The position numbers were made by a program, and so were the translations under genes. Source: Trichoplax adhaerens (Eukaryota; Animalia; Placozoa). Taken from it: a stretch of DNA of 64,000 nucleotides. How positions within the stretch are numbered: the stretch's first letter is position 1; each line of letters starts with the position of its first letter. The stretch lies in contig NW_002060944.1 of NCBI RefSeq assembly GCF_000150275.1, positions 9,076,159 to 9,140,158 of the forward strand. Reading direction: 5' to 3'. The notes beneath the pieces were generated by a model. It ran no database searches and had not been told where the DNA came from. It worked only from the letters and a program-made list of their open reading frames with translations. Positions 49,697 to 60,052 of this stretch are shown one piece after another.

Positions 49697-52073
49697 GAAT
49701 GAGTGTTAAGAATTAGCACAATAAACGTTATGACACCATGTGTGAGAATTGCCTTTTTTGGTATTTAGGTTATTTATTAATTTTTATGTTGTCCAAACTT
49801 GAAACATCATATCTTATAGATAAATCGGATGATTGTTTTAATCATTTAGTTGTGATTGACATATATATATACATATAAACATATACAGTTAATTTAATTA
49901 ACTATTGATATCGATAAACTATTAAACCTTGATGTGGTTGTATACTCGGTGCGTAAATTGCTTTACTATGTTTGGTAAAGGAAACTTAGCTCGAAACCTA
50001 GCTACGTCGTAATGAAAATTTATCTTATGTTGCCAAACGTTTATTATGTTAAATATCTAGAAATCATTGTCTTGATGCCTTTTTTTTTTTAAGATATTTA
50101 ATATTGATCAGTAAATCTGAAATCAACAAAAATTTCGGTCATATGAATCGCAGTTATATCAGCATAGTTCATCGCATCAGTTCAATATAATCCCAAAATA
50201 TATATGCAGTAGCGTATATACATATATAGCGTCGGCTGCTTATAAATTGAGTAGACGACGCTGTACGTACGAAATTGCGAGATTCTCGCATACTATACTA
50301 CAATTAGAATCTATGGTCCATGAGATCAATATCTTACGGTATTTTTATACCAGTTTTGTACAATGACCGTAAGCAGTCGGTTGTCCGGAAATAATGCTTT
50401 CCAAATGCTCTTGCTTACTGAAACGATATTCAAATGTAAATTGTATTTTTTAACTTTTAGTAACAATAAAACTTTCATGCATTGTAATTCATTGTTGTGG
50501 TAATCGTGTAACAATTGCAGTGTCTTCAAGTAGACGCATAGTTCTCAAGTTACACTGCGTTCACATTATATCAGCAGGGTGGTTGCCTATACCGAATACT
50601 TATTGTAGATCAATCTGGATAAAGTTTATGTAGAATCTTTTCACATAGCTCCATGCTATTTTATACACGTATGCATTATGCCCATCTTGAATATATTAAC
50701 TTTATTAAACATACAATACTTCAGTACAGTAGTAGTGTTGATTAAATGAACATTTAAGTCATGCACTGTTCATGTGAACTTACAGTTCTGTAGTTATTAA
50801 TTATTATTAATTAAATAATATCTGAAGGCGATCTGGCCAGGCTCAAGCGACAAATACTATACTATACACTTACGTTAAAACGAGTATAAATGACCACCTT
50901 CATATAAAATTGTACAGCAAATCCTTAAGCAGTAATTATTGTAAATTTAAAGACCATACGAATAAGGCATCAAAATAGTACACTAAATGGTGTAGTAGAT
51001 CATCTACTGTAAGAGCGATTTAATAATTGAAGCCTTTTACTTCGTAATGTAAGTGTACAGTACAATACTGTAATAAAAGATTGGTTAGACCTGAATTTTC
51101 TTTTGGCATGGATGCCGTATGGTCTCCTACTGTACACTGAGTGTGCAGTATGTTGCCCATTTCTCATCTCCCCAATACAGGCCAAAGCCTAAGTAGCATC
51201 AGCAGGATATCATATACAGATTAATGTAACGAGTTATTTTTCTAATTCTGCAAAGCATATCGACGGCTGAAGCATTTAAATGTTGTAACTAGGACTAGGT
51301 TCAAAGTCTAAAATCTCTTGGTTCAGCTATCAAGCTGCGTACATACGTCTATTCAATTCGTACAACTTAGTTTGGGTAACACTAGAAAAGATCAGACAAA
51401 ATGGAGAGTAAGAAGTAGAAACTGTTAGTACTTAATTCTAGACTTCTGACGTCAGTGACTTTAATTGCATTGCACGAAAAGCTGATTCTGTGATCTGTAA
51501 TGTATGAAATTTAGAACACTTTGGAGACAGTTAACCGGCAACGTACTGTCAAATTTACAATTTTTTGTGTCAAGCAAAGGCGTAGTGCTTGGCCAATACA
51601 GTAGCTCTCGGCAATTTTGAACATTCTCACTCTGATAAGATACCGTTGAAGGTATCTTAGGGTGAAAATAATAACCTCTTACGGTATCTCGGAATGTGAA
51701 TGCTGCTGAATCCATCCAGACCACTGCACAACAGTACAAATAAATATTCGTTTACGCGTATTATTGTACTGTAATTACAAAAAAAAAATTCTACGGCGCT
51801 ATGACATCAATCTTGTCAAGACAGTTACAGTACCGGACATGTACAGTACTGTAAGTACTGCATCTCTTCAGAAAGGTCAGCTGGAATGCTACAGTACAGT
51901 ATACTGCTGTTTTGGCATAGTTTTTCTTCAAATGCACAAGTCTGGTAGATGTAGCACTGTGTCAGTAGTCATGGCTATTTTTCTTTACCGTCGAGTCATG
52001 GGCTACTCTAAAATTTGATTTCAATCCCTCGCGGGAGTGCCCTTCCCGTCGTGAATAACAAGGAAGTTGCAAA

Positions 52074-52440
52074 AAATGTACAGTACAGTACGTTTCTTCT
52101 AATGTACTGTACTGTATAGTACTATAAAACTCAGGTGTACAGTACTGTACAGTGTACAGTACAGTACTGTACTGTACAGTACGCAAGCACATTCAGTACT
52201 GCCCCTTACAGTACAGTACAGTATACTGTAGTACGTTCAGTTTGTACTGTACAGTACAGTACATTGAAAATGACCAATGAAATACTGTACAGTATTGTGT
52301 GCTGCCACCAGGTGGCGATGATCGTCACGTTTCAATACGGAACGCCTGCAGTACTACAGTACAGTACAGTACAGTACACTGTACTATGCACTCTGTGAAC
52401 TCTACAGTACTGTACTGTATACTGTACTATGGACTACTAG
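52074..52440. repeat. Dense (ACAGT)n/(ACTGT)n pentamer tract immediately upstream of SHMT
   Basis: Runs such as GTACAGTACAGTACTGTACTGTACAGTAC and TACAGTACAGTACAGTACAGTACA in both orientations. Confidence 0.9.
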
Positions 52441-52505: not shown

Positions 52506-55500
52506 ATGGCCAGTTTTCTGAAAACTACTCGATCCCTCGGCAATTTGGTAGGACAACAGATGATGTTCATGATGAGCTAGTATCACTTACAATTAATTGT
52601 TTAAGCTAGTGACACTGTTCATTTTTATATTTAAAATGGCAGATGACTAAAATCTTATGTTACTTTATTTTTAAAAACAAATTTGCTGACCAACATTTTC
52701 TTTTAATCCATTTAAACTCGTCGGACGCTTTCTGCAGCCAGCCCAAGTGCGAAGTATCCTATTTGCCCGCGGACTACCTGTTCGTACAGCTTGGACTGGG
52801 TTACAGTCTATTTCAGAAGATGACCCAGAACTGTTTGATATCATTCGTAGAGAAAAATCACGCCAGAGAGGAGATTTGGAATTGATTGCTTCGGAGGTAT
52901 GATAGCGTCTAAATTTTCAAAACTCAGCCTGGACAACGTTCAAATCCACATGACACATGAGATGCAGTGATAGCTACGGTGCTGTACTGTACTGTGCCGT
53001 ACTTTGACATGAAATCTCGAAAATCAACAATGACTGAGCCAGCTAAGCAATGTGAGATAGAGTCAACCTAAAACGATGTAATTTGCATTGCTAGCTTGGG
53101 CATTATGAAGTGAAATATTTTGTGATTTATCTTTTAAAATTGGTTAATTAATTATAGTATGTTCAAAGCACTACTTTACACTGAAAGGCACTGTAATCAT
53201 TAATGAATGTGCAGTTGGCTATCATTTGCTTACCATAGTACAATATATTATATATTAAATTGCCATATTTATCATGAACATTCTTATTCGTTAGATAACA
53301 TCGGCGATAACTTTATTTTAATTTATAGTCACTTAATTAATCGCTGTCAAATGCGACTAGTTTATTTCAGAAATCAATGCACAATGTATCGAAGGGATCC
53401 ACACTTTCTGTGTTTACGCCTTTTATATTAGTTTTACTGAATCTACACACGCACTGTCTAATACTCGTACAGTACATAGAATTGTTAGGAAAATTTGTTT
53501 ACCTCCTAATACGGTGTGCGAATGTTTCTGTTAGGCAGTGGACAAGTAGACTGTCCATTCCAATGGACAGTTTGAACAGCTTTGGTTGTTAATAGTGTGA
53601 GCAACTACGAAAGAGCATATCTTTCTCTCTTTACTGTAATACAAGTCACTGTAGTACTTTTCATGTGACAAAGTCTAGGCTAAAATTATATAATTCAGCG
53701 GCACGTCGCCAGCATCTAACGATCAAATGCCGCTGGTCGTTCAGTTACAGGTTTTGTACAGAAAAGGCATCACTTGTAGCAGTGACACGCCGATCATGTA
53801 GAGGTAGCTTTATGTATCATCATACTCTTGCTAACGCTTAGTCCTAAATTAATGTTATAGATGTACGAGTATATACAGTATTCCAATCGATTTAGATTGT
53901 GCTTTAAGCCGCTGTGGTGCCGTCAGTAATTATTAAATGTGTACATGCACGGACAATCAGCGAAATGCAATAATTACGCTATTCCTATTACTACTGCAAT
54001 ACTGGTAAATGGATAAAACCCTTCACTTTGTACATTAAGTTAATCATAGCAGTAGTTTTACCAGCCTGATTGCCATGGAGCAGTGGAACAGACAAAGATT
54101 TTTAGCTGACTCTTGATTTTTACAATGACTGGTTAAGGCCAGGGTCGGCAATGATATAGAAATATTAATTTACAACCTGTTGCTTTATTTGAATAGCAAA
54201 TTAATTAATTCATGGCATTAACTACTATTGAAACCCTGATATTTGTAATGTGTAAGTTGCAATTACAAAAATCGTGATAAAATTTCCTTATAAACCGATA
54301 TGCTGGAAGCAAGCGTAACGTACAGCTGCACACCTTCCTAAATCACGATTAATTTTAGTAACTACTAAGGTAACTTTTAAAATATGAACGTAATGGTGCA
54401 GTAATCAGACTGCAGCGTTTTCTGATTAATTCTATATCAGCATAGCTTTAGTGTAGAACCGAATCTTCGGCAGATGTATGCAAATGTTTAGCACATGCAC
54501 ACCAATTTTTTGAATGCACAATCCTGATGGATTTATGCTGTATTTCATACGGCACGTGTTTCGATGCCGGCCGTAAATAATACAGTTATACCAGCTGTCC
54601 AGGGACGCCCTTACCACGGAGCTATGTTCTGAGGACCTCTAGTTTATATAACGCTGTCTAGCGTTAAAGTAGCCCCTCCCTTAATTTTTGCCTTATTGTT
54701 ATACAGACTGCAGTCCGCTGTACAAATACGAGCACAGTACATTACTGTTAGTACGGTGCCGAACGCACTATTGCAATTACTAATTCGCCAAAGAAGATAC
54801 AGAATGTTGCTATTACAGAAAAATTATGTTGTACATGTTGTGAAACGAATGTTGATGAGAATTTTTTACTACTTACACCAACGTAAATGCACCTAGACCT
54901 GATGCTTTCGCAACTTCCTAAACAACAATTGATGTTGACAGAGAATATAGTGTTCTGTACAGTGTTTAACTGTATTATATGATATTATTGACCGATCACC
55001 ATAATGATGTTCTAGTAATAATTTTTATTACTATTTAATGAAGAATTTCACTAGTCGGGCTGTCATGAATGCTCTTGGATCCTGCTTGACCAATAAATAC
55101 TCGGAAGGATATCCTGGCCAAAGGTAAGTTTGTATGTAATAAATAAATACAACTGTACTACAGTACTTGTAATCAGCTACAGCATTTGTTGTGTGTAGAT
55201 GGAAGCTTCGAAATTAGTTATATGCATTTTATTACAACATTAATTTCGAGATAAAATGTATGTTATTTTTGTATACGTTTACTGTTTCGCCTGTTGAAAT
55301 TATTATTTTACGTTCTAAAAGTACTTCGATTGGCTATAAATTAACAACATTAGATTACTGTAATGTATCATACATCAATTACTATGTACATTAAGTGATT
55401 AAAGCTTAGACTAATTATTAATAACAAATTATCTAATATAGATATTATGGTGGAAATCAGTGCATTGACGAGATTGAACTTATGTGCCAACGTCGTGCTT

Positions 55501-58500
55501 TGGAAGCGTACGACCTTGATCCAGAAAAATGGGGAGTTAACGTGCAACCATATTCAGGTAATAGCACCCATAAAGTAACCTCATATAAAGAAGCTATCTA
55601 TTCTATCGTATTCGTTCATCATTTAACTGACAATATGTTTGCTTCATGAAAACTCAGGGTCACCTGGCAACTTTGCAGTCTACACTGGTTTATTAAAGCC
55701 TCATAGTAGAGTTATGGGTCTCGATTTACCTGATGGTGGACAGTAAGTCGTAACCTTTAACGTTAGTTTACGTGAATTATCTAGTGCACATCTTATGGAT
55801 CTATTTGAGATGATATTTCTCATATTTTGATCAATAGTTACTAATAACATCGTAAATGTAGTAGTACAATAGATTAACATAAGATAATATGACATTTTGT
55901 TAACACATCGAACGCTCATTCCATAATCTACTTCGTATGGTTATATTTAGTTAACTTGTAATTTTAAAACCTTTACAGTTTAACTCATGGATTTATGTCA
56001 GGAAAAGTCAGAATCTCTGCAACGTCAATTTACTTTGAATCATTGGCTTATCATTCCCACGTAAGTATGATTACTTAAGTTCTTTTCAGTCTGATATAGA
56101 ATGGCTCACGATAATGAAGTTATCAATTACTGAATCTTCATACTGCGCGACTGTATAATTTATATAATCGATCTGTCATAATATCAAAATCTTTTTCTAT
56201 TCAAGCAACTCTTTACTTCGAGAAATAGTTAGATTATCCAACTTTTATATGTAATTCTTGCAAGTAGTCAGAAGTAAAAGGCGGTAAATGGTAAGAAGGC
56301 GTGCCATCATCTTCAGCATACTACACTTACAGTAAAATACTTTCTTCAACAATACCTATCTTAGTCACTTGTTAATTATTAAGCACATGAAATGCTACAC
56401 GATGCAGATACCGCTTAAATTTAGTGAGGGTCTGATTATATTACGTATATATTAGCTAAAAGAAGAGAACATAAATTAGATAAATGAAGCGAGTAACGAT
56501 TTTTCACAATAGTACCGACTAAATCATATGCTACTTTGGTTACAAACGAATGTAAGAAAAGATAATCTGCATACTAGGTCCATTAAACAACTTTTGTATA
56601 TTAAGAAATATAACAAGTTAAATTAATTCTATCTGATGATGGAGTGGGCCCCGTAATGATTAGGTATTTACTATTAGTTGAAATCTGGTCGTTATAAATG
56701 TTTTCTACTGCATACAAGTAAACGCTGATGTATTTCGCTCCGTTAGATGAATATCAACGGCAATGTGGGTGTTATATTATCAGCAGTATTTAGTTGCTGA
56801 TTTCTTCAATATTTTTCGATCTCATGAATTTAACACTGGTCATTAATATGAAAATAGTTTTAAGATCTCTTACGCCTGCGTCAGCTCTTCACTGAGACAC
56901 CATTGTCAGTTTACAGTTTTACTTAAAAATTATGTCTGCAGCGTATCTGCTGAATCTCTTCTCTGATCTACGGTAACCAATTATCGCTATAAAGTAATTG
57001 CTGATATCAAAAAGTATTTGCAGCGCTACAATGAGTTACAATTATAATCTATATTAACTCTAGTCTAGTGAATAAAATGTTTTAGGAAAGCTCAGACAAT
57101 TTTTTTTGTCCTTTTCCTCATTCCTACTGCTGGTATTGAGTAACTCGGACCAATTTAAATAAATTGACGGCAGACCTGCAGAAAGCATCTGTCTGTCCTG
57201 TATAGTGTACAGTACCTTACTCTATCCACTGTCCAACTGTATACAGTACTATAGTGATGGCGGCATTTCTATCTAATTTGCATAAATCCCATAATAGAAG
57301 AAATAGTACCAAAGCCACTATATAAATCCAATCGAACTTGCAAAGTGAGTGAGTTAGGTTAGAAGCTCGCTGTAGGGGCTACATTCGAGTGCTCTTGTAC
57401 TGATCAATCATGATACAGATGCACAATTCGCCCTTGGGAAGGTCTGAGACCAAGGTCGCTTTACGTCTTCCAGACGAAGGCCGCTGTAACAGGCGGGTGG
57501 GTCACCAGAAATTGGCTTGATGGAGTTTATATCGGTCCAAGACACTACAAGGGATTTATCTCTTTAGTGGAGGCCATGAACTTGCATCATAGTTGAAAAA
57601 AGACTCACGACCAGCTGAATGAGTTCAATTAGCGAGGTGGCACTTATGTGTTCTAACTCAATTCAGACTACTCTCTGACCTAGCTCGCGTCTTTTTATCG
57701 CTAGTAGAACTTGGTATACTATCGGAATTTTATTCTTAATTTTGCAGTACAGACATTGAAATATTTCAATCGCCTGGATTGATCTGTAGATTTACGCACT
57801 AGATAATCATCACTCTGTAATAGCTAAAAATGGAAACCCTGCATGTAGAAGGTATTTACATCGTCGACGTAATAATATTGATATGATTGGAATAAGGATG
57901 TACGCAAAGGTGTCTTTGTAAATTCTATGCTATCAGAATAATATCATGATGTTTGTTTAAAGAGCCTCTGGTATTCCCGTAAAACCAAGGCTGAATTCAA
58001 AAATAGACTAAAAGCCATTTTACTAATGATCATCTATTTAGTATTTTAATGGTTGATACTAGATCCATGATAACTATCGATGTATTTTATAACTATTCTA
58101 GCCGGATACTGGAGAGGTTGACTACGACGCATTACAAAAGCAAGCGAAAGCATTTGTACCAGAAATGATTATCGCAGGAACCAGTGCCTATTCCAGATTG
58201 TTGGACTATCAAAAATTTCGCGAGGTACCGGCTTCTAAAGTAGATAGAATCACTTAGTTATAGTAACATGTTTATATCAAATAGAATCTTTTATTGTTTA
58301 ATGTACTTGAAAAGATTCGTCAATGTTATGATTACGTAAGCGTTGTAATTAATTTTTGTTAACTTTCTCTCCCTAGATATGTAACGATGTCAAGGCAATT
58401 CTCATGGCCGATATGGCACATATTAGCGGCCTTGTTGCAGCTAAGGTATCTCAAGAATATTCTATAGTATCAACATATAGCGTGGAAGTCTCATTGCTTT

Positions 58501-60052
58501 ATCATTATAATCATAGAGAATCTTTTTGAGCTTTCAAAAGTTCGAATGCGTTTCTTACTCTAAGTCAATATTCGTGAAAATGTATTTGTAGGTTGTCCCT
58601 AGTCCTTTTGAATATGCTGACGTTGTAACAACTACTACTCATAAAACCCTCCGGGGCCCAAGGTAATAAGCCCTTAATGCTTTCAGTTTGATTCGAAGTG
58701 ACATCATGTATTCAATTAACATTCCAAATTGATAGATCTGGAATCATTTTCTACCGCCGCGGTGTGAAGGGGGTCGATAAGAAAGGAAATGATATCCTTA
58801 AGGAATATTGACTTAGTATTAATAATTATGTTACGTGATAAAGTTGCTGTATCAGACAGGAAGCAGCTTTATAATTGAAGAATTCCTTGACCAAGTTTAA
58901 AAATTAAGTATGATTATGAAAGCAAGATCAATAAAGCTGTCTTTCCCGGTCTGCAAGGAGGTCCTCACAACAACGTCATAGCTGGTGTTGCAATCGCTCT
59001 GAGACAGGTTAAGTCCCATGAATCAGGACAACAACTACAAATGTGTATACTGAATGGTGACCTTATGACTTGTTTATAACAATATCATTGTTTTAATTGC
59101 AGGCTAAAACTCCAGAATTTGTTGAATACCAGAAACAAGTATTAAAGAATTGTAAAGCCATGGCAAATGCCTTGCTTAATAAAGGATACACACTTATTTC
59201 AGGTAGGCAAAATTATTAATAGCTACTGTTTTTCTCCATTTTATATGCATGTACATTGTACATTGTTTAGTAAATTAGTTTATGATTTCTTCTATGCAAC
59301 ATTTTGTAACTTTGCAAGTTATTTTAATTTAAGGTGGTACGGATAATCACCTTATTTTGGTCGACTTAAGACCAAAGGTATGTCTGTCTTTTGCCTTTCG
59401 TTAAGTAAAATCAATGGGATGACTTCAGTTCAAACGTCTAATAAGTTTTATTGATAATATGATTTTAAAAATCTAGGGAGTAGACGGATCCAGAACAGAA
59501 AGGGTTCTTGAACTTGTCAATATTTCAACGAATAAGAATACTTGCCCTGGTGATAAAAGCGCCCTATTTCCTGGCGGAATGAGACTCGGTAAAAATTATA
59601 GCATCAAATTATTGCTTTATTTGTACAAGCTACTGGTAATCATCATTTAATACTTTTATTCATTGATCTGACTAGTGGCTTAGCTTAGTGTTGACACGGA
59701 TTTTTGACAACTCTTCTAGGAACACCAGCGTTGACATCGAGAGACTTTAAGGAAAAGGACTTTGAACAAGTTGTGGAATTCATTGAGCGTGGCGTACAGA
59801 TTACTTATGAAGCAAAGCAAAAAACCGGTTTGTATTTATCTTCACCAATAGGATTTGCTACTGCATGTGAAACCTGATTTCTATATTGCCGTTTTTAGTA
59901 TGTAATTGCTTTTGTATTGCTGTTCAGGTACCCTGAAAGAATTCAAGGAGTTCGTTATCAGTGACCCTGATATTACTGCAAAAATTAGTGCTCTTCGTCA
60001 AGAAGTGAAAGAGTTTGCTGAGCAATTTCCTATGCCTGGTCAAGATTACTAA
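52506..60052 (+). CDS. SHMT2: Serine hydroxymethyltransferase, mitochondrial type (16 exons, about 492 aa)
   Basis: Exons 52506-52547, 52738-52896, 55044-55123, 55442-55557, 55658-55742, 55979-56060, 58102-58224, 58377-58445, 58592-58662, 58736-58791, 58901-59007, 59103-59202, 59334-59377, 59477-59588, 59720-59827, 59928-60052 (1479 nt). [43 protein letters not shown] site [26 protein letters not shown]. Arg-rich, acid-free N-terminus [35 protein letters not shown] resembles a mitochondrial presequence. Confidence 0.93.
57276..57326 (+). promoter_or_regulatory. Putative type-3 Pol III promoter of the RNase P RNA gene
   Basis: Octamer ATTTGCAT 57276-57283, PSE-position element TCCCATAATAGAAGAAA about 57287-57303, TATATAAA 57319-57326 about 30 nt before the predicted 5' end. 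Confidence 0.7.
57349..57690 (+). ncRNA. RPPH1: Nuclear RNase P RNA (H1-type), nested in SHMT intron 6
   Basis: CCCTTGGGAAGGTCTGAGAC (CR-I), TAACAGG, CCAGAAA, AGACTCACGACCAGCTGAATGAGTTCAAT and TAACTCAATTCAGACTACTCT (CR-V) match the recalled vertebrate H1 RNA in order; GTCTGA pairs with TCAGAC (P4); the ends GAGTTAGGTTAGA and TCTGACCTAGCTC form P1. Confidence 0.96.
57692..57696 (+). terminator. Pol III oligo-T terminator
   Basis: TTTTT a few nt after the 3' strand of P1. Confidence 0.7.
58792..58900 (+). other. U12-type (minor spliceosome) intron in SHMT with apparent AT-AA ends
   Basis: 5' end ATATCCTT, branch site TTCCTTGAC 58883-58891; splicing G|AA ATT AAG TAT restores [15 protein letters not shown]; the unspliced frame hits TGA. 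Confidence 0.85.

What the first reader, a model, noticed from the sequence alone, without database searches (positions are those of the whole stretch)
57276..57696. Complete RNase P RNA gene nested sense-strand in an SHMT intron, still carrying its own Pol III promoter and terminator
Seen: all conserved RNase P RNA blocks and the P1 and P4 pairings lie inside the 2 kb intron 6 of SHMT (56061-58101), on the host strand, with octamer, PSE-position element, TATATAAA and T5. Established: most animals transcribe RNase P RNA as an independent type-3 Pol III gene, whereas insects and crustaceans embed it in Pol II host introns and have lost the Pol III signals. Inference: this locus combines both states and could be the missing intermediate. 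The RNA could come from Pol III and from the excised host intron, and Pol III occupancy could act as a roadblock that tunes SHMT elongation or splicing. The RNA itself may already be annotated for this species; the nested dual architecture is the point to check.
Basis: partly seen in the sequence, partly recalled or inferred. Interest (0 to 1): 0.9.

Follow-up and report, generated by a model that had tools for sequence, protein, structure and literature searches.

The report
RNase P RNA gene inside SHMT intron
The only RNase P RNA gene of this placozoan (Trichoplax) genome lies, in the same direction as its host, inside an old intron of a serine hydroxymethyltransferase gene, and it keeps a full U6-type RNA polymerase III promoter and terminator, so it is most likely an ordinary self-transcribed gene in an unusual place and not an evolutionary missing link.

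Summary
Observation confirmed. Rfam's nuclear RNase P model hits window 57355-57682 (+) at 143 bits. It is the only copy in the 105.6 Mb assembly, by covariance model and by BLAST.

The gene lies in a 2041-nt GT-AG, phase-0 intron (56061-58101) of a + strand SHMT gene. The flanking exons map to consecutive SHMT residues (135-161, then 162 onward).

Upstream elements, counted from the inferred start G57349:
- octamer at -73
- 13-nt PSE at -61, matching this genome's U6 and U6atac PSEs 12/13, at nearly the same offset
- TATATAAA at -30

The T5 at 57692-57696 is the first T-run after position 57200.

The same intron position exists in the annelid Capitella, where it is 56 nt and empty. The RPR unit therefore entered a pre-existing intron.

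Interpretation partly supported. The architecture does combine "sense-intronic" with "Pol III signals", and I found this described in no paper I searched. "Missing intermediate" fails on phylogeny: placozoans are not on the pancrustacean stem, so this is an independent analogue.

With introns and intergenic DNA at about 1:1 in animals, sense nesting by chance is likely. The RNA itself was annotated in 2009. Moderate-to-low interest.

The parts
57207..57260 (+). GTACWGTAC-type motifs upstream of the promoter: an exact GTACAGTAC at 57207 and TACAGTA cores at -141 and -107. Possible distal enhancer element.
   Evidence: The same motif forms arrays upstream of U6 (both copies) and MRP (both copies), and a dense cluster of 21 at 51.8-52.4 kb upstream of SHMT exon 1. 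Any function is inferred only.
57276..57283 (+). Octamer ATTTGCAT at -73, four bases upstream of the PSE (a compact DSE-PSE arrangement).
   Evidence: U6 (both copies) has ATGCAAAT at -88. U4 has CTAATTTGCAT directly upstream of its PSE, and U2 has two ATGCAAAT copies.
57288..57300 (+). Proximal sequence element (PSE) CCCATAATAGAAG at -61.
   Evidence: It matches U6 (CCTATAATAGAAG, -63) and U6atac (CCCATAATAAAAG, -63) at 12 of 13 positions each. The core C.ATAA..AA is invariant across 8 snRNA-type promoters (alignment A1). It carries the A at core position 8 seen only in the Pol III genes.
57319..57326 (+). TATA box TATATAAA at -30.
   Evidence: This is the same -30 position as TATATATT in U6 and CATAAATA in U6atac.
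57349..57691 (+). RNase P RNA (RPR), about 343 nt. The 5' end is inferred at G57349. The Rfam hit covers 57355-57682.
   Evidence: RF00009 at 143.3 bits, full model. P1 pairs G57349-C57688, duplex energy -25.5 kcal/mol. Single copy in the genome. GC is 46.6% against 32-33% in the flanking intron, and there is no internal TTTT.
57692..57696 (+). T5 Pol III terminator, 3 nt after the P1 3' strand.
   Evidence: it is the first run of four or more T on the + strand after position 57200. The intron flanks carry 17 such runs in 1621 nt. U6, U6atac and MRP end in the same way.
56061..58101 (+). Host intron: 2041 nt, GTAAGT...TAG, phase 0.
   Evidence: The other introns of this gene are 34-315 nt, except one of 2144 nt. 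The same intron position exists in Capitella SHMT, where it is 56 nt.
55980..56060 (+). SHMT exon upstream of the intron (27 aa, LTHGF...AYHSH).
   Evidence: It aligns to rabbit SHMT 1cj0 residues 135-159 over query residues 1-25 of 27. An identical 27-aa exon exists in Capitella.
58102..58224 (+). SHMT exon downstream of the intron (PDTGEVDYD...KFRE). The 3' boundary is approximate.
   Evidence: It aligns to rabbit SHMT residues 162-203. See also the sequence.
52804..60046 (+). Host SHMT coding region, at least 14 exons.
   Evidence: Local tblastn with the intronless paralogue (L048) as a guide, and the ORF translations.

Best explanation
This is the single, functional RNase P RNA gene of a Trichoplax genome. 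It is an autonomous type-3 (external-promoter) RNA polymerase III unit of about 420-490 bp. The unit has an octamer enhancer, a PSE bound by SNAPc, a TATA box at -30, a start near G57349, and a T5 terminator right after helix P1.

The unit lies in the sense orientation inside an ancestral, phase-0 intron of an SHMT gene. The RPR unit entered, or the intron expanded around it, in the placozoan lineage. That intron is 56 nt and empty in an annelid.

Pol III makes the mature-length RNA directly. Pol II also reads through the unit as part of the SHMT pre-mRNA, and the intron is spliced out. Any RPR salvaged from the excised intron would be a by-product.

Shown here: RNA identity, single copy, promoter homology to U6 and U6atac, the terminator, the intron context, and the age of the intron.
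Inferred: actual Pol III transcription, the exact 5' and 3' ends, and the direction of the relocation.
For: - RNA identity: RF00009 at 143 bits over the full model length.
- Copy number: the only hit in the genome by covariance model and by BLAST.
- PSE: 12/13 identical to the U6 and U6atac PSEs, at -61 against -63. TATA is at -30 in all three.
- PSE subtype: A at core position 8 and an offset of -60 to -62, as in U6 and U6atac. U1, U2, U4 and U5 have T there and sit at -56 or -57 (alignment A1).
- Octamer: adjacent to the PSE, as in U4, U2 and U6.
- Terminator: the T5 directly follows P1 and is the first T4+ run in 490 nt, while the flanks carry one per about 95 nt.
- Host intron: flanking exons are contiguous in SHMT coordinates, splice sites are canonical, and there are no assembly gaps.
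- Intron age: the position is shared with Capitella at 56 nt, and is absent in Lottia and Saccoglossus.
- Literature: type-3 Pol III signals are the rule for RPRs outside Pancrustacea (PMC4287351).
Against: - Pol III use, the ends of the RNA and the relative contribution of the host transcript are therefore inferred.
- The Pol II snRNA genes of this genome also have A/T-rich TATA-like stretches near -30. TATA alone therefore does not assign the polymerase here. The assignment rests on the PSE subtype and spacing, the T-run, and analogy to other animals.
- The two MRP genes of the same genome lack this PSE, so type-3 promoters are not uniform here.
- The absence of an internal TTTT is only weakly significant (P about 0.25 on the RNA's own composition).
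Confidence: 0.8

Rival explanations
1. Dual-source, regulatory architecture. RPR is made both by Pol III and by exonucleolytic trimming of the excised SHMT intron. The Pol III complex also acts as a co-directional roadblock that tunes SHMT elongation or splicing, coupling one-carbon metabolism to tRNA maturation.
For: - Sense orientation in a housekeeping host gene is exactly the geometry used in Drosophila (PMC4287351).
- Palsule 2019 argue that the conserved Xrn2 and exosome nucleases, together with the RNase P proteins, would trim and protect any intron-borne RPR, and they postulate a transition period with both modes (PMC6797745).
- Pol III units in introns can impede Pol II, as with the Polr3e MIR (PMC5358760).
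- The intron is about 10 times longer than typical introns of this gene.
Against: - No expression data are available.
- The documented roadblock case is antisense.
- Only about 25% of the intron is the RPR unit, and a second 2.1-kb intron in the same gene has no RNA gene.
- A chance sense-intronic location has a prior of roughly 0.2-0.25, given about 1:1 intron to intergenic DNA (PMC5534336).
- Nothing in the sequence calls for a second pathway.
Confidence: 0.12
2. Drosophila-like state already reached. The Pol III signals are inactive relics, and RPR is produced only from the Pol II host intron.
For: - It is the single copy, in the sense orientation, inside an intron.
- This genome's Pol II snRNA genes also carry a PSE plus an A/T-rich -30 region, so these motifs do not by themselves prove Pol III use.
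Against: - All four elements are intact and correctly spaced to within 2 nt of U6 and U6atac.
- The PSE is of the Pol III subtype.
- The terminator abuts P1.
- The body contains no T4 run.
- In insects and crustaceans these signals are absent. Relics would be expected to decay.
Confidence: 0.04
3. Artefact: a misassembly or chimeric scaffold places an intergenic RPR between two SHMT exons.
For: - This is a draft assembly of 1414 contigs.
- The intron is unusually long for this gene.
Against: - There is no N anywhere in the 64-kb window.
- Splice sites are canonical GTAAGT/TAG in phase 0.
- The exon pair matches consecutive SHMT residues, and the same exon boundaries occur in Capitella.
- The remaining exons continue in order on the same strand.
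Confidence: 0.03

Closest known systems
Vertebrate-type RPR genes (human H1 RNA/RPPH1) and other type-3 Pol III genes (U6, U6atac, 7SK, MRP)
   Same: - External promoter with an octamer enhancer, a PSE, a TATA box at about -30 and a T-run terminator.
- The RNA is made with mature ends.
- The compact arrangement, with the octamer almost touching the PSE, recalls the compact human H1 promoter. That resemblance is from my own knowledge and was not tested here.
- The promoter is homologous to this genome's own U6 and U6atac promoters.
   Different: - It lies inside a protein-coding gene's intron on the sense strand, not in intergenic DNA.
- Manivannan 2015 found intergenic locations for all RPRs outside Pancrustacea, except the centipede gene.
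Pancrustacean intron-embedded RPR (Drosophila ATPsynC intron; Manivannan 2015, Palsule 2019)
   Same: A single-copy RPR in the same orientation as the host, inside an intron of a housekeeping Pol II gene.
   Different: - The insect and crustacean genes lack PSE, TATA and T-run. They depend on the host promoter, splicing, debranching and Xrn2/exosome trimming.
- Here all Pol III signals are intact.
- The host gene is different (SHMT).
- The lineage is unrelated (Placozoa), so the origin is independent.
Strigamia maritima (centipede) RPR
   Same: Intronic and still carrying typical Pol III signals.
   Different: The centipede gene is antisense to its host and cannot be supplied by the host transcript. 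The Trichoplax gene is in the sense orientation.
Pol III units nested in Pol II introns (for example the MIR in the first intron of Polr3e; Yeganeh 2017, PMC5358760)
   Same: An occupied Pol III unit inside a Pol II intron. This is the precedent for transcriptional interference.
   Different: - That element is an antisense SINE with an internal promoter, and interference was shown experimentally.
- Here the unit is a sense-strand essential ribozyme gene with an external promoter, and interference is pure conjecture.

Membership tests
Nuclear RNase P RNA (Rfam RF00009) | Covariance-model score above the curated gathering threshold over the full model. | tested here: met
   143.3 bits against a threshold of 28, model positions 1-301 of 301, E=2.4e-41.
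Nuclear RNase P RNA (Rfam RF00009) | Conserved regions CR-I and CR-V forming P4, and a closing P1 helix. | tested here: met
   GGGAAGGUCUGAGA and AAUUCAGACUACUCUC are aligned to the P4 strands. P1 forms a 15-17 bp duplex at -25.5 kcal/mol.
Nuclear RNase P RNA (Rfam RF00009) | It is the functional copy: no better or free-standing copy exists elsewhere in the genome. | tested here: met
   One covariance-model hit and one BLAST hit, to itself, in 105.6 Mb.
Type-3 (external promoter) RNA polymerase III gene | PSE at about -55 to -65, shared with the U6 gene of the same genome. | tested here: met
   CCCATAATAGAAG at -61, against U6 CCTATAATAGAAG and U6atac CCCATAATAAAAG at -63.
Type-3 (external promoter) RNA polymerase III gene | TATA box at about -25 to -30, at a fixed distance from the PSE. 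| tested here: met
   TATATAAA at -30. PSE-to-TATA spacing is 31 nt, against 33 nt in U6 and U6atac. Caveat: the Pol II snRNA genes of this genome also have A/T-rich stretches near -30.
Type-3 (external promoter) RNA polymerase III gene | Run of four or more T immediately 3' of the RNA, with none inside it. | tested here: met
   T5 at 57692-57696, and no TTTT in 57349-57691.
Type-3 (external promoter) RNA polymerase III gene | Transcription by Pol III: inhibitor sensitivity, ChIP signal, 5' triphosphate. | not testable with these tools
Pancrustacean-type intron-embedded, Pol II-dependent RPR | RPR in a host intron, in the same orientation as the host. | tested here: met
   Intron 56061-58101 of the + strand SHMT gene, with the RPR also on +.
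Pancrustacean-type intron-embedded, Pol II-dependent RPR | Absence of PSE, TATA and poly-T signals. | tested here: not met
   All three are present and match U6 and U6atac.
Pancrustacean-type intron-embedded, Pol II-dependent RPR | Expression depends on the host promoter and on intron processing. | not testable with these tools
   This needs reporter or inhibitor experiments.

The most novel reading that the evidence does not exclude
The sole RNase P RNA gene of placozoans is stably served by two polymerases. Pol III would make most of it, while the SHMT pre-mRNA intron supplies a second pool trimmed by exonucleases. The nested Pol III complex would in turn throttle SHMT elongation. On this reading the arrangement is conserved across placozoan genera. 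It would be a living example of the transitional state that preceded the Pol III-to-Pol II switch of RPR in insects and crustaceans, and it would make that switch experimentally approachable.
Probability: 0.1. Interest if true: 0.6.

Novelty: new member of a known kind. Interest (0 to 1): 0.35.

Why it matters
RNase P RNA is the textbook Pol III ribozyme gene. Its switch to intron-embedded, Pol II-dependent production in insects and crustaceans is an unusual change in how an essential gene is expressed.

The authors of that work proposed that an RPR copy first landed in an intron and later lost its Pol III signals. They found no extant animal in that first state on the sense strand.

Trichoplax shows that a genome can run on a single RPR gene that is sense-nested in a Pol II intron while keeping a full Pol III promoter. 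The proposed first step is therefore viable. This gives a natural substrate for asking whether an intron-borne RPR is salvaged from host transcripts.

It says nothing direct about arthropod history. The nesting may simply be neutral in a genome where about half of the non-exonic DNA is intronic.

Two side results may help placozoan genome annotation:
- The SHMT intron is ancient.

Tried and rejected
No expression, end-mapping or splice-junction data were obtained.

2. Cross-placozoan synteny.
- An exact look-up of a spurious 36-aa ORF inside the RPR found nothing.
- A full-length search with the intronless paralogue found the Trichoplax sp. H2 protein (100% identical) and an 80%-identical protein that occurs only in Logan transcript-like contigs.
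- Neither gives a route to the genomic SHMT/RPR locus of another genus.
- Exons were searched singly by reference.

3. 7SK. Rfam found none in this genome, so it could not serve as a promoter comparator.

4. PSE as a genome-wide predictor. The 13-mer occurs 30 times against 30 for the reversed control. 26 of the 30 have no Rfam RNA within 1.5 kb. The motif alone is therefore not diagnostic; its fixed offset is.

5. MRP promoters do not share the PSE.

6. Signs of insertion. There are no target-site duplications or flanking repeats around the RPR unit.

7. Other RNA genes in the two long introns. None was credible. The best were sub-threshold U8-like (E=0.29) and snoU105B-like (E=1) hits.

8. 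The bacterial-type promoter and terminator scan is irrelevant here and was at chance level.

It was repeated by reference.

10. I did not determine whether the other snRNA-type genes of this genome are also nested in introns.
Full report
**1. Observation**

The Rfam scan of the whole window gives a single hit at gathering threshold: nuclear RNase P RNA (RF00009) at 57355-57682 on the + strand. It scores 143.3 bits against a threshold of 28, with E=2.4e-41, and covers all 301 model positions. The CR-I and CR-V/P4 strands are aligned.

By hand and by duplex folding, P1 extends outward to G57349-C57688, with a duplex energy of -25.5 kcal/mol.

In the window's own assembly this is the only RF00009 hit. 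It is also the only BLAST match of the 348-nt unit. The assembly has 105,631,681 bases in 1414 contigs, and the window lies at about 9.1 Mb of a long contig.

**2. Organism**

- Copy numbers match the published Trichoplax adhaerens ncRNA annotation (Hertel et al. 2009, PMC2655684): one RPR, two nearly identical MRP genes, two good U6 genes, and single U1, U2, U4 and U5 genes.
- An intronless SHMT paralogue 97 kb downstream on the same contig is 100% identical over 470 aa to a protein named "[Trichoplax sp. H2]".
- I take it as Trichoplax: adhaerens H1, or the near-identical H2.
- Hertel et al. annotated the RPR but say nothing about its intronic position.

**3. Host gene**

SHMT exons lie on the + strand from about 52.8 to 60.05 kb.

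- The exon 55980-56060 (27 aa) aligns to rabbit cytosolic SHMT residues 135-159 with query residues 1-25. Extrapolated to all 27 residues, it covers 135-161.
- The exon starting at 58102 aligns from residue 162.
- The interval 56061-58101 starts GTAAGT, ends TAG, and is in phase 0. The window has no N.
- The interval is 2041 nt. [quoted passage not shown]
- From the first coding exon I could find, it is the fifth intron rather than the sixth.
Exons were searched one by one by reference.

**4. Promoter and terminator, tested against the same genome**

I located U6 (two good copies), U6atac, MRP (two copies), U1, U2, U4 and U5 in the assembly and compared their upstream regions (alignment A1). 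Offsets for RPR are counted from +1 = G57349.

| Gene | Octamer | PSE | PSE offset | TATA-like element | TATA offset |
|---|---|---|---|---|---|
| RPR | ATTTGCAT at -73 | CCCATAATAGAAG | -61 | TATATAAA | -30 |
| U6 (both copies) | ATGCAAAT at -88 | CCTATAATAGAAG | -63 | TATATATT | -30 |
| U6atac | none found | CCCATAATAAAAG | -63 | CATAAATA | -30 |

- The PSE core C.ATAA..AA is invariant in all eight snRNA-type promoters aligned.
- The Pol II genes U1, U2, U4 and U5 carry the core 5-6 bp closer to the start (-56 or -57), with T at core position 8.
- U6, U6atac and RPR carry A at that position and sit at -60 to -62.
- The RPR promoter therefore belongs to the Pol III subclass on two independent criteria.

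The 13-mer alone is not enriched genome-wide: 30 matches against 30 for the reversed control. 26 of the 30 matches have no Rfam RNA nearby. The four that do (U6 twice, U6atac, RPR) all hold it at the same offset. With about 30 sites in 211 Mb of two-strand sequence, that has a chance probability of order 1e-6 per gene.

The T5 at 57692-57696 follows P1 by 3 nt. It is the first T4+ run on the + strand after 57200, whereas the intron flanks have 17 such runs in 1621 nt. U6, U6atac and MRP end the same way.

Caveats:
- Pol II snRNA genes here also have A/T-rich stretches near -30, so TATA by itself does not decide the polymerase.
- The MRP promoters lack this PSE.
- 7SK was not found.

**5. Age of the intron**

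I fetched SHMT loci of three bilaterians and mapped their own proteins back.

- Capitella has the same 27-aa exon (LTHGF...YRLN) and the same phase-0 intron before P-x-TG-x-IDYD. There the intron is only 56 nt.
- Lottia and Saccoglossus lack the intron.
- The intron position therefore predates the placozoan-bilaterian split. The RPR unit entered, or the intron grew around it, in the placozoan lineage.
- No target-site duplication or flanking repeat marks the event.
- No other credible RNA gene lies in either long intron.

**6. Mechanism**

The best-supported reading is an ordinary autonomous type-3 Pol III gene that happens to be nested in the sense orientation (confidence about 0.8). SNAPc/TBP/Brf2-type initiation at about G57349 and termination in the T5 would give an RNA of about 343-347 nt with mature ends.

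Pol II necessarily transcribes the same DNA as part of the SHMT pre-mRNA. Whether some RPR is rescued from the excised intron is open. Palsule et al. 2019 (PMC6797745) argue that conserved Xrn2/exosome trimming plus protection by RNase P proteins would act on any intron-borne RPR, so the route is feasible, but nothing here shows it. A Pol III roadblock has a precedent only for an antisense MIR in Polr3e (PMC5358760).

**7. Comparison with what is known, and novelty**

Manivannan et al. 2015 (PMC4287351) divide animals into two groups:
- insects and crustaceans, whose RPR is embedded, sense, and without Pol III signals;
- all other animals, with Pol III signals and an intergenic location, except the centipede gene, which is intronic and antisense.

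Trichoplax was not in their sample. The present locus meets the location criterion of the first group and fails its defining criterion, loss of Pol III signals. It meets every sequence criterion of the second group. It is thus a type-3 RPR gene in a new place, not a member of the pancrustacean class.

As a "missing intermediate" it fails. The lineage is wrong. The intron is empty in an annelid, and sponge, mollusc and annelid RPRs are intergenic. [quoted passage not shown]

Because intronic and intergenic DNA are about 1:1 in animal genomes (PMC5534336), a non-exonic gene lands in an intron on the sense strand roughly one time in four or five. The nesting needs no selective explanation.

**8. 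Verdict**

- Observation: confirmed.
- Interpretation: partly supported. The architecture is real; the evolutionary and regulatory claims are not.
- The RNA is already annotated. I found the nesting described in no paper I searched.
- Interest is moderate-to-low (0.35). It would rise if the nesting proves conserved across placozoan genera or if intron-derived RPR is detected.

Noticed in passing
L048:973-2421 (+) = G000:C1413 at about 9230756-9232204, roughly 97 kb downstream of the window's SHMT: A second SHMT gene with no introns: an uninterrupted 482-codon frame, 470 aa from the first ATG. It is about 52% identical to the host gene's exon and 100% identical to a protein NCBI names 'SHMT, mitochondrial [Trichoplax sp. 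H2]'. An 80%-identical orthologue occurs in Logan contigs of three SRR runs. It may be a retrogene or an old cytosolic/mitochondrial pair. The host gene's N-terminus ([16 protein letters not shown]...) looks more like a mitochondrial presequence than the paralogue's does.
   Followed up: partly
L052:5069-5205 (Capitella teleta SHMT), compared with window 55980-58101: The 27-aa exon and the phase-0 intron after it are exactly conserved between Capitella and Trichoplax. The intron is 56 nt in Capitella and 2041 nt in Trichoplax. The intron is missing in Lottia and Saccoglossus SHMT.
   Followed up: yes
Upstream regions of L042 (U1), L043 (U2), L044 (U4), L045 (U5), L002 and L003 (U6), L007 (U6atac), and window 57288-57300: [quoted passage not shown] The PSE core sits at -56/-57 with T at core position 8 in U1, U2, U4 and U5. 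It sits at -60/-62 with A in U6, U6atac and RPR. Both classes have A/T-rich stretches near -30. This suggests that polymerase choice is set by PSE subtype and spacing, reminiscent of plant and Drosophila snRNA genes.
   Followed up: partly
window 51841-52407 (21 copies); also 35.5, 45.7, 47.3 and 60.9 kb; upstream of U6, MRP, U4, U5 and U2 in L002, L003, L005, L006, L044, L045 and L043: The palindromic motif GTACWGTAC forms dense arrays just upstream of SHMT exon 1 and upstream of most snRNA-type genes. In the two MRP genes it replaces a recognisable PSE. It is probably a general placozoan promoter or enhancer element.
   Followed up: partly
L007:528-1629 (-) = G000:C1402:438491-439592: One full-length U6atac gene (104.8 bits) is followed within about 1.1 kb by five tandem truncated copies that cover only the 3' two-thirds of the model (30-50 bits).
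   Followed up: no
L004 = G000:C460:774-871 (+): A third U6 hit, just at threshold (44.1 bits). Its 5' half is divergent and it has no PSE, TATA or octamer upstream. It is probably a pseudogene or an assembly fragment on a 1.4-kb contig.
   Followed up: no
whole genome G000: No 7SK RNA (RF00100) was detected in the assembly, although the control genomes cannot validate this search. A scan for the Pol III-type PSE plus TATA at fixed spacing might find a divergent 7SK or other type-3 genes. 26 PSE 13-mer sites have no known RNA nearby.
   Followed up: no
window 52897-55040: The first coding intron of the same SHMT gene is also about 2.1 kb, against 34-315 nt for most others. No RNA family hit is above noise there; the best is snoU105B-like at 54827-54897, E=1.
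   Followed up: partly
window 56523-56639 (-): A sub-threshold U8 snoRNA-like hit (24 bits against a gathering score of 41, E=0.29), antisense in the RPR-bearing intron. Most likely chance.
   Followed up: no
window 58792-58903: Another first-stage note on this window proposes an AT-AA minor-spliceosome intron in the same SHMT gene. My tblastn exon map places an intron between 58796 and 58903. I did not examine its splice sites.
   Followed up: no
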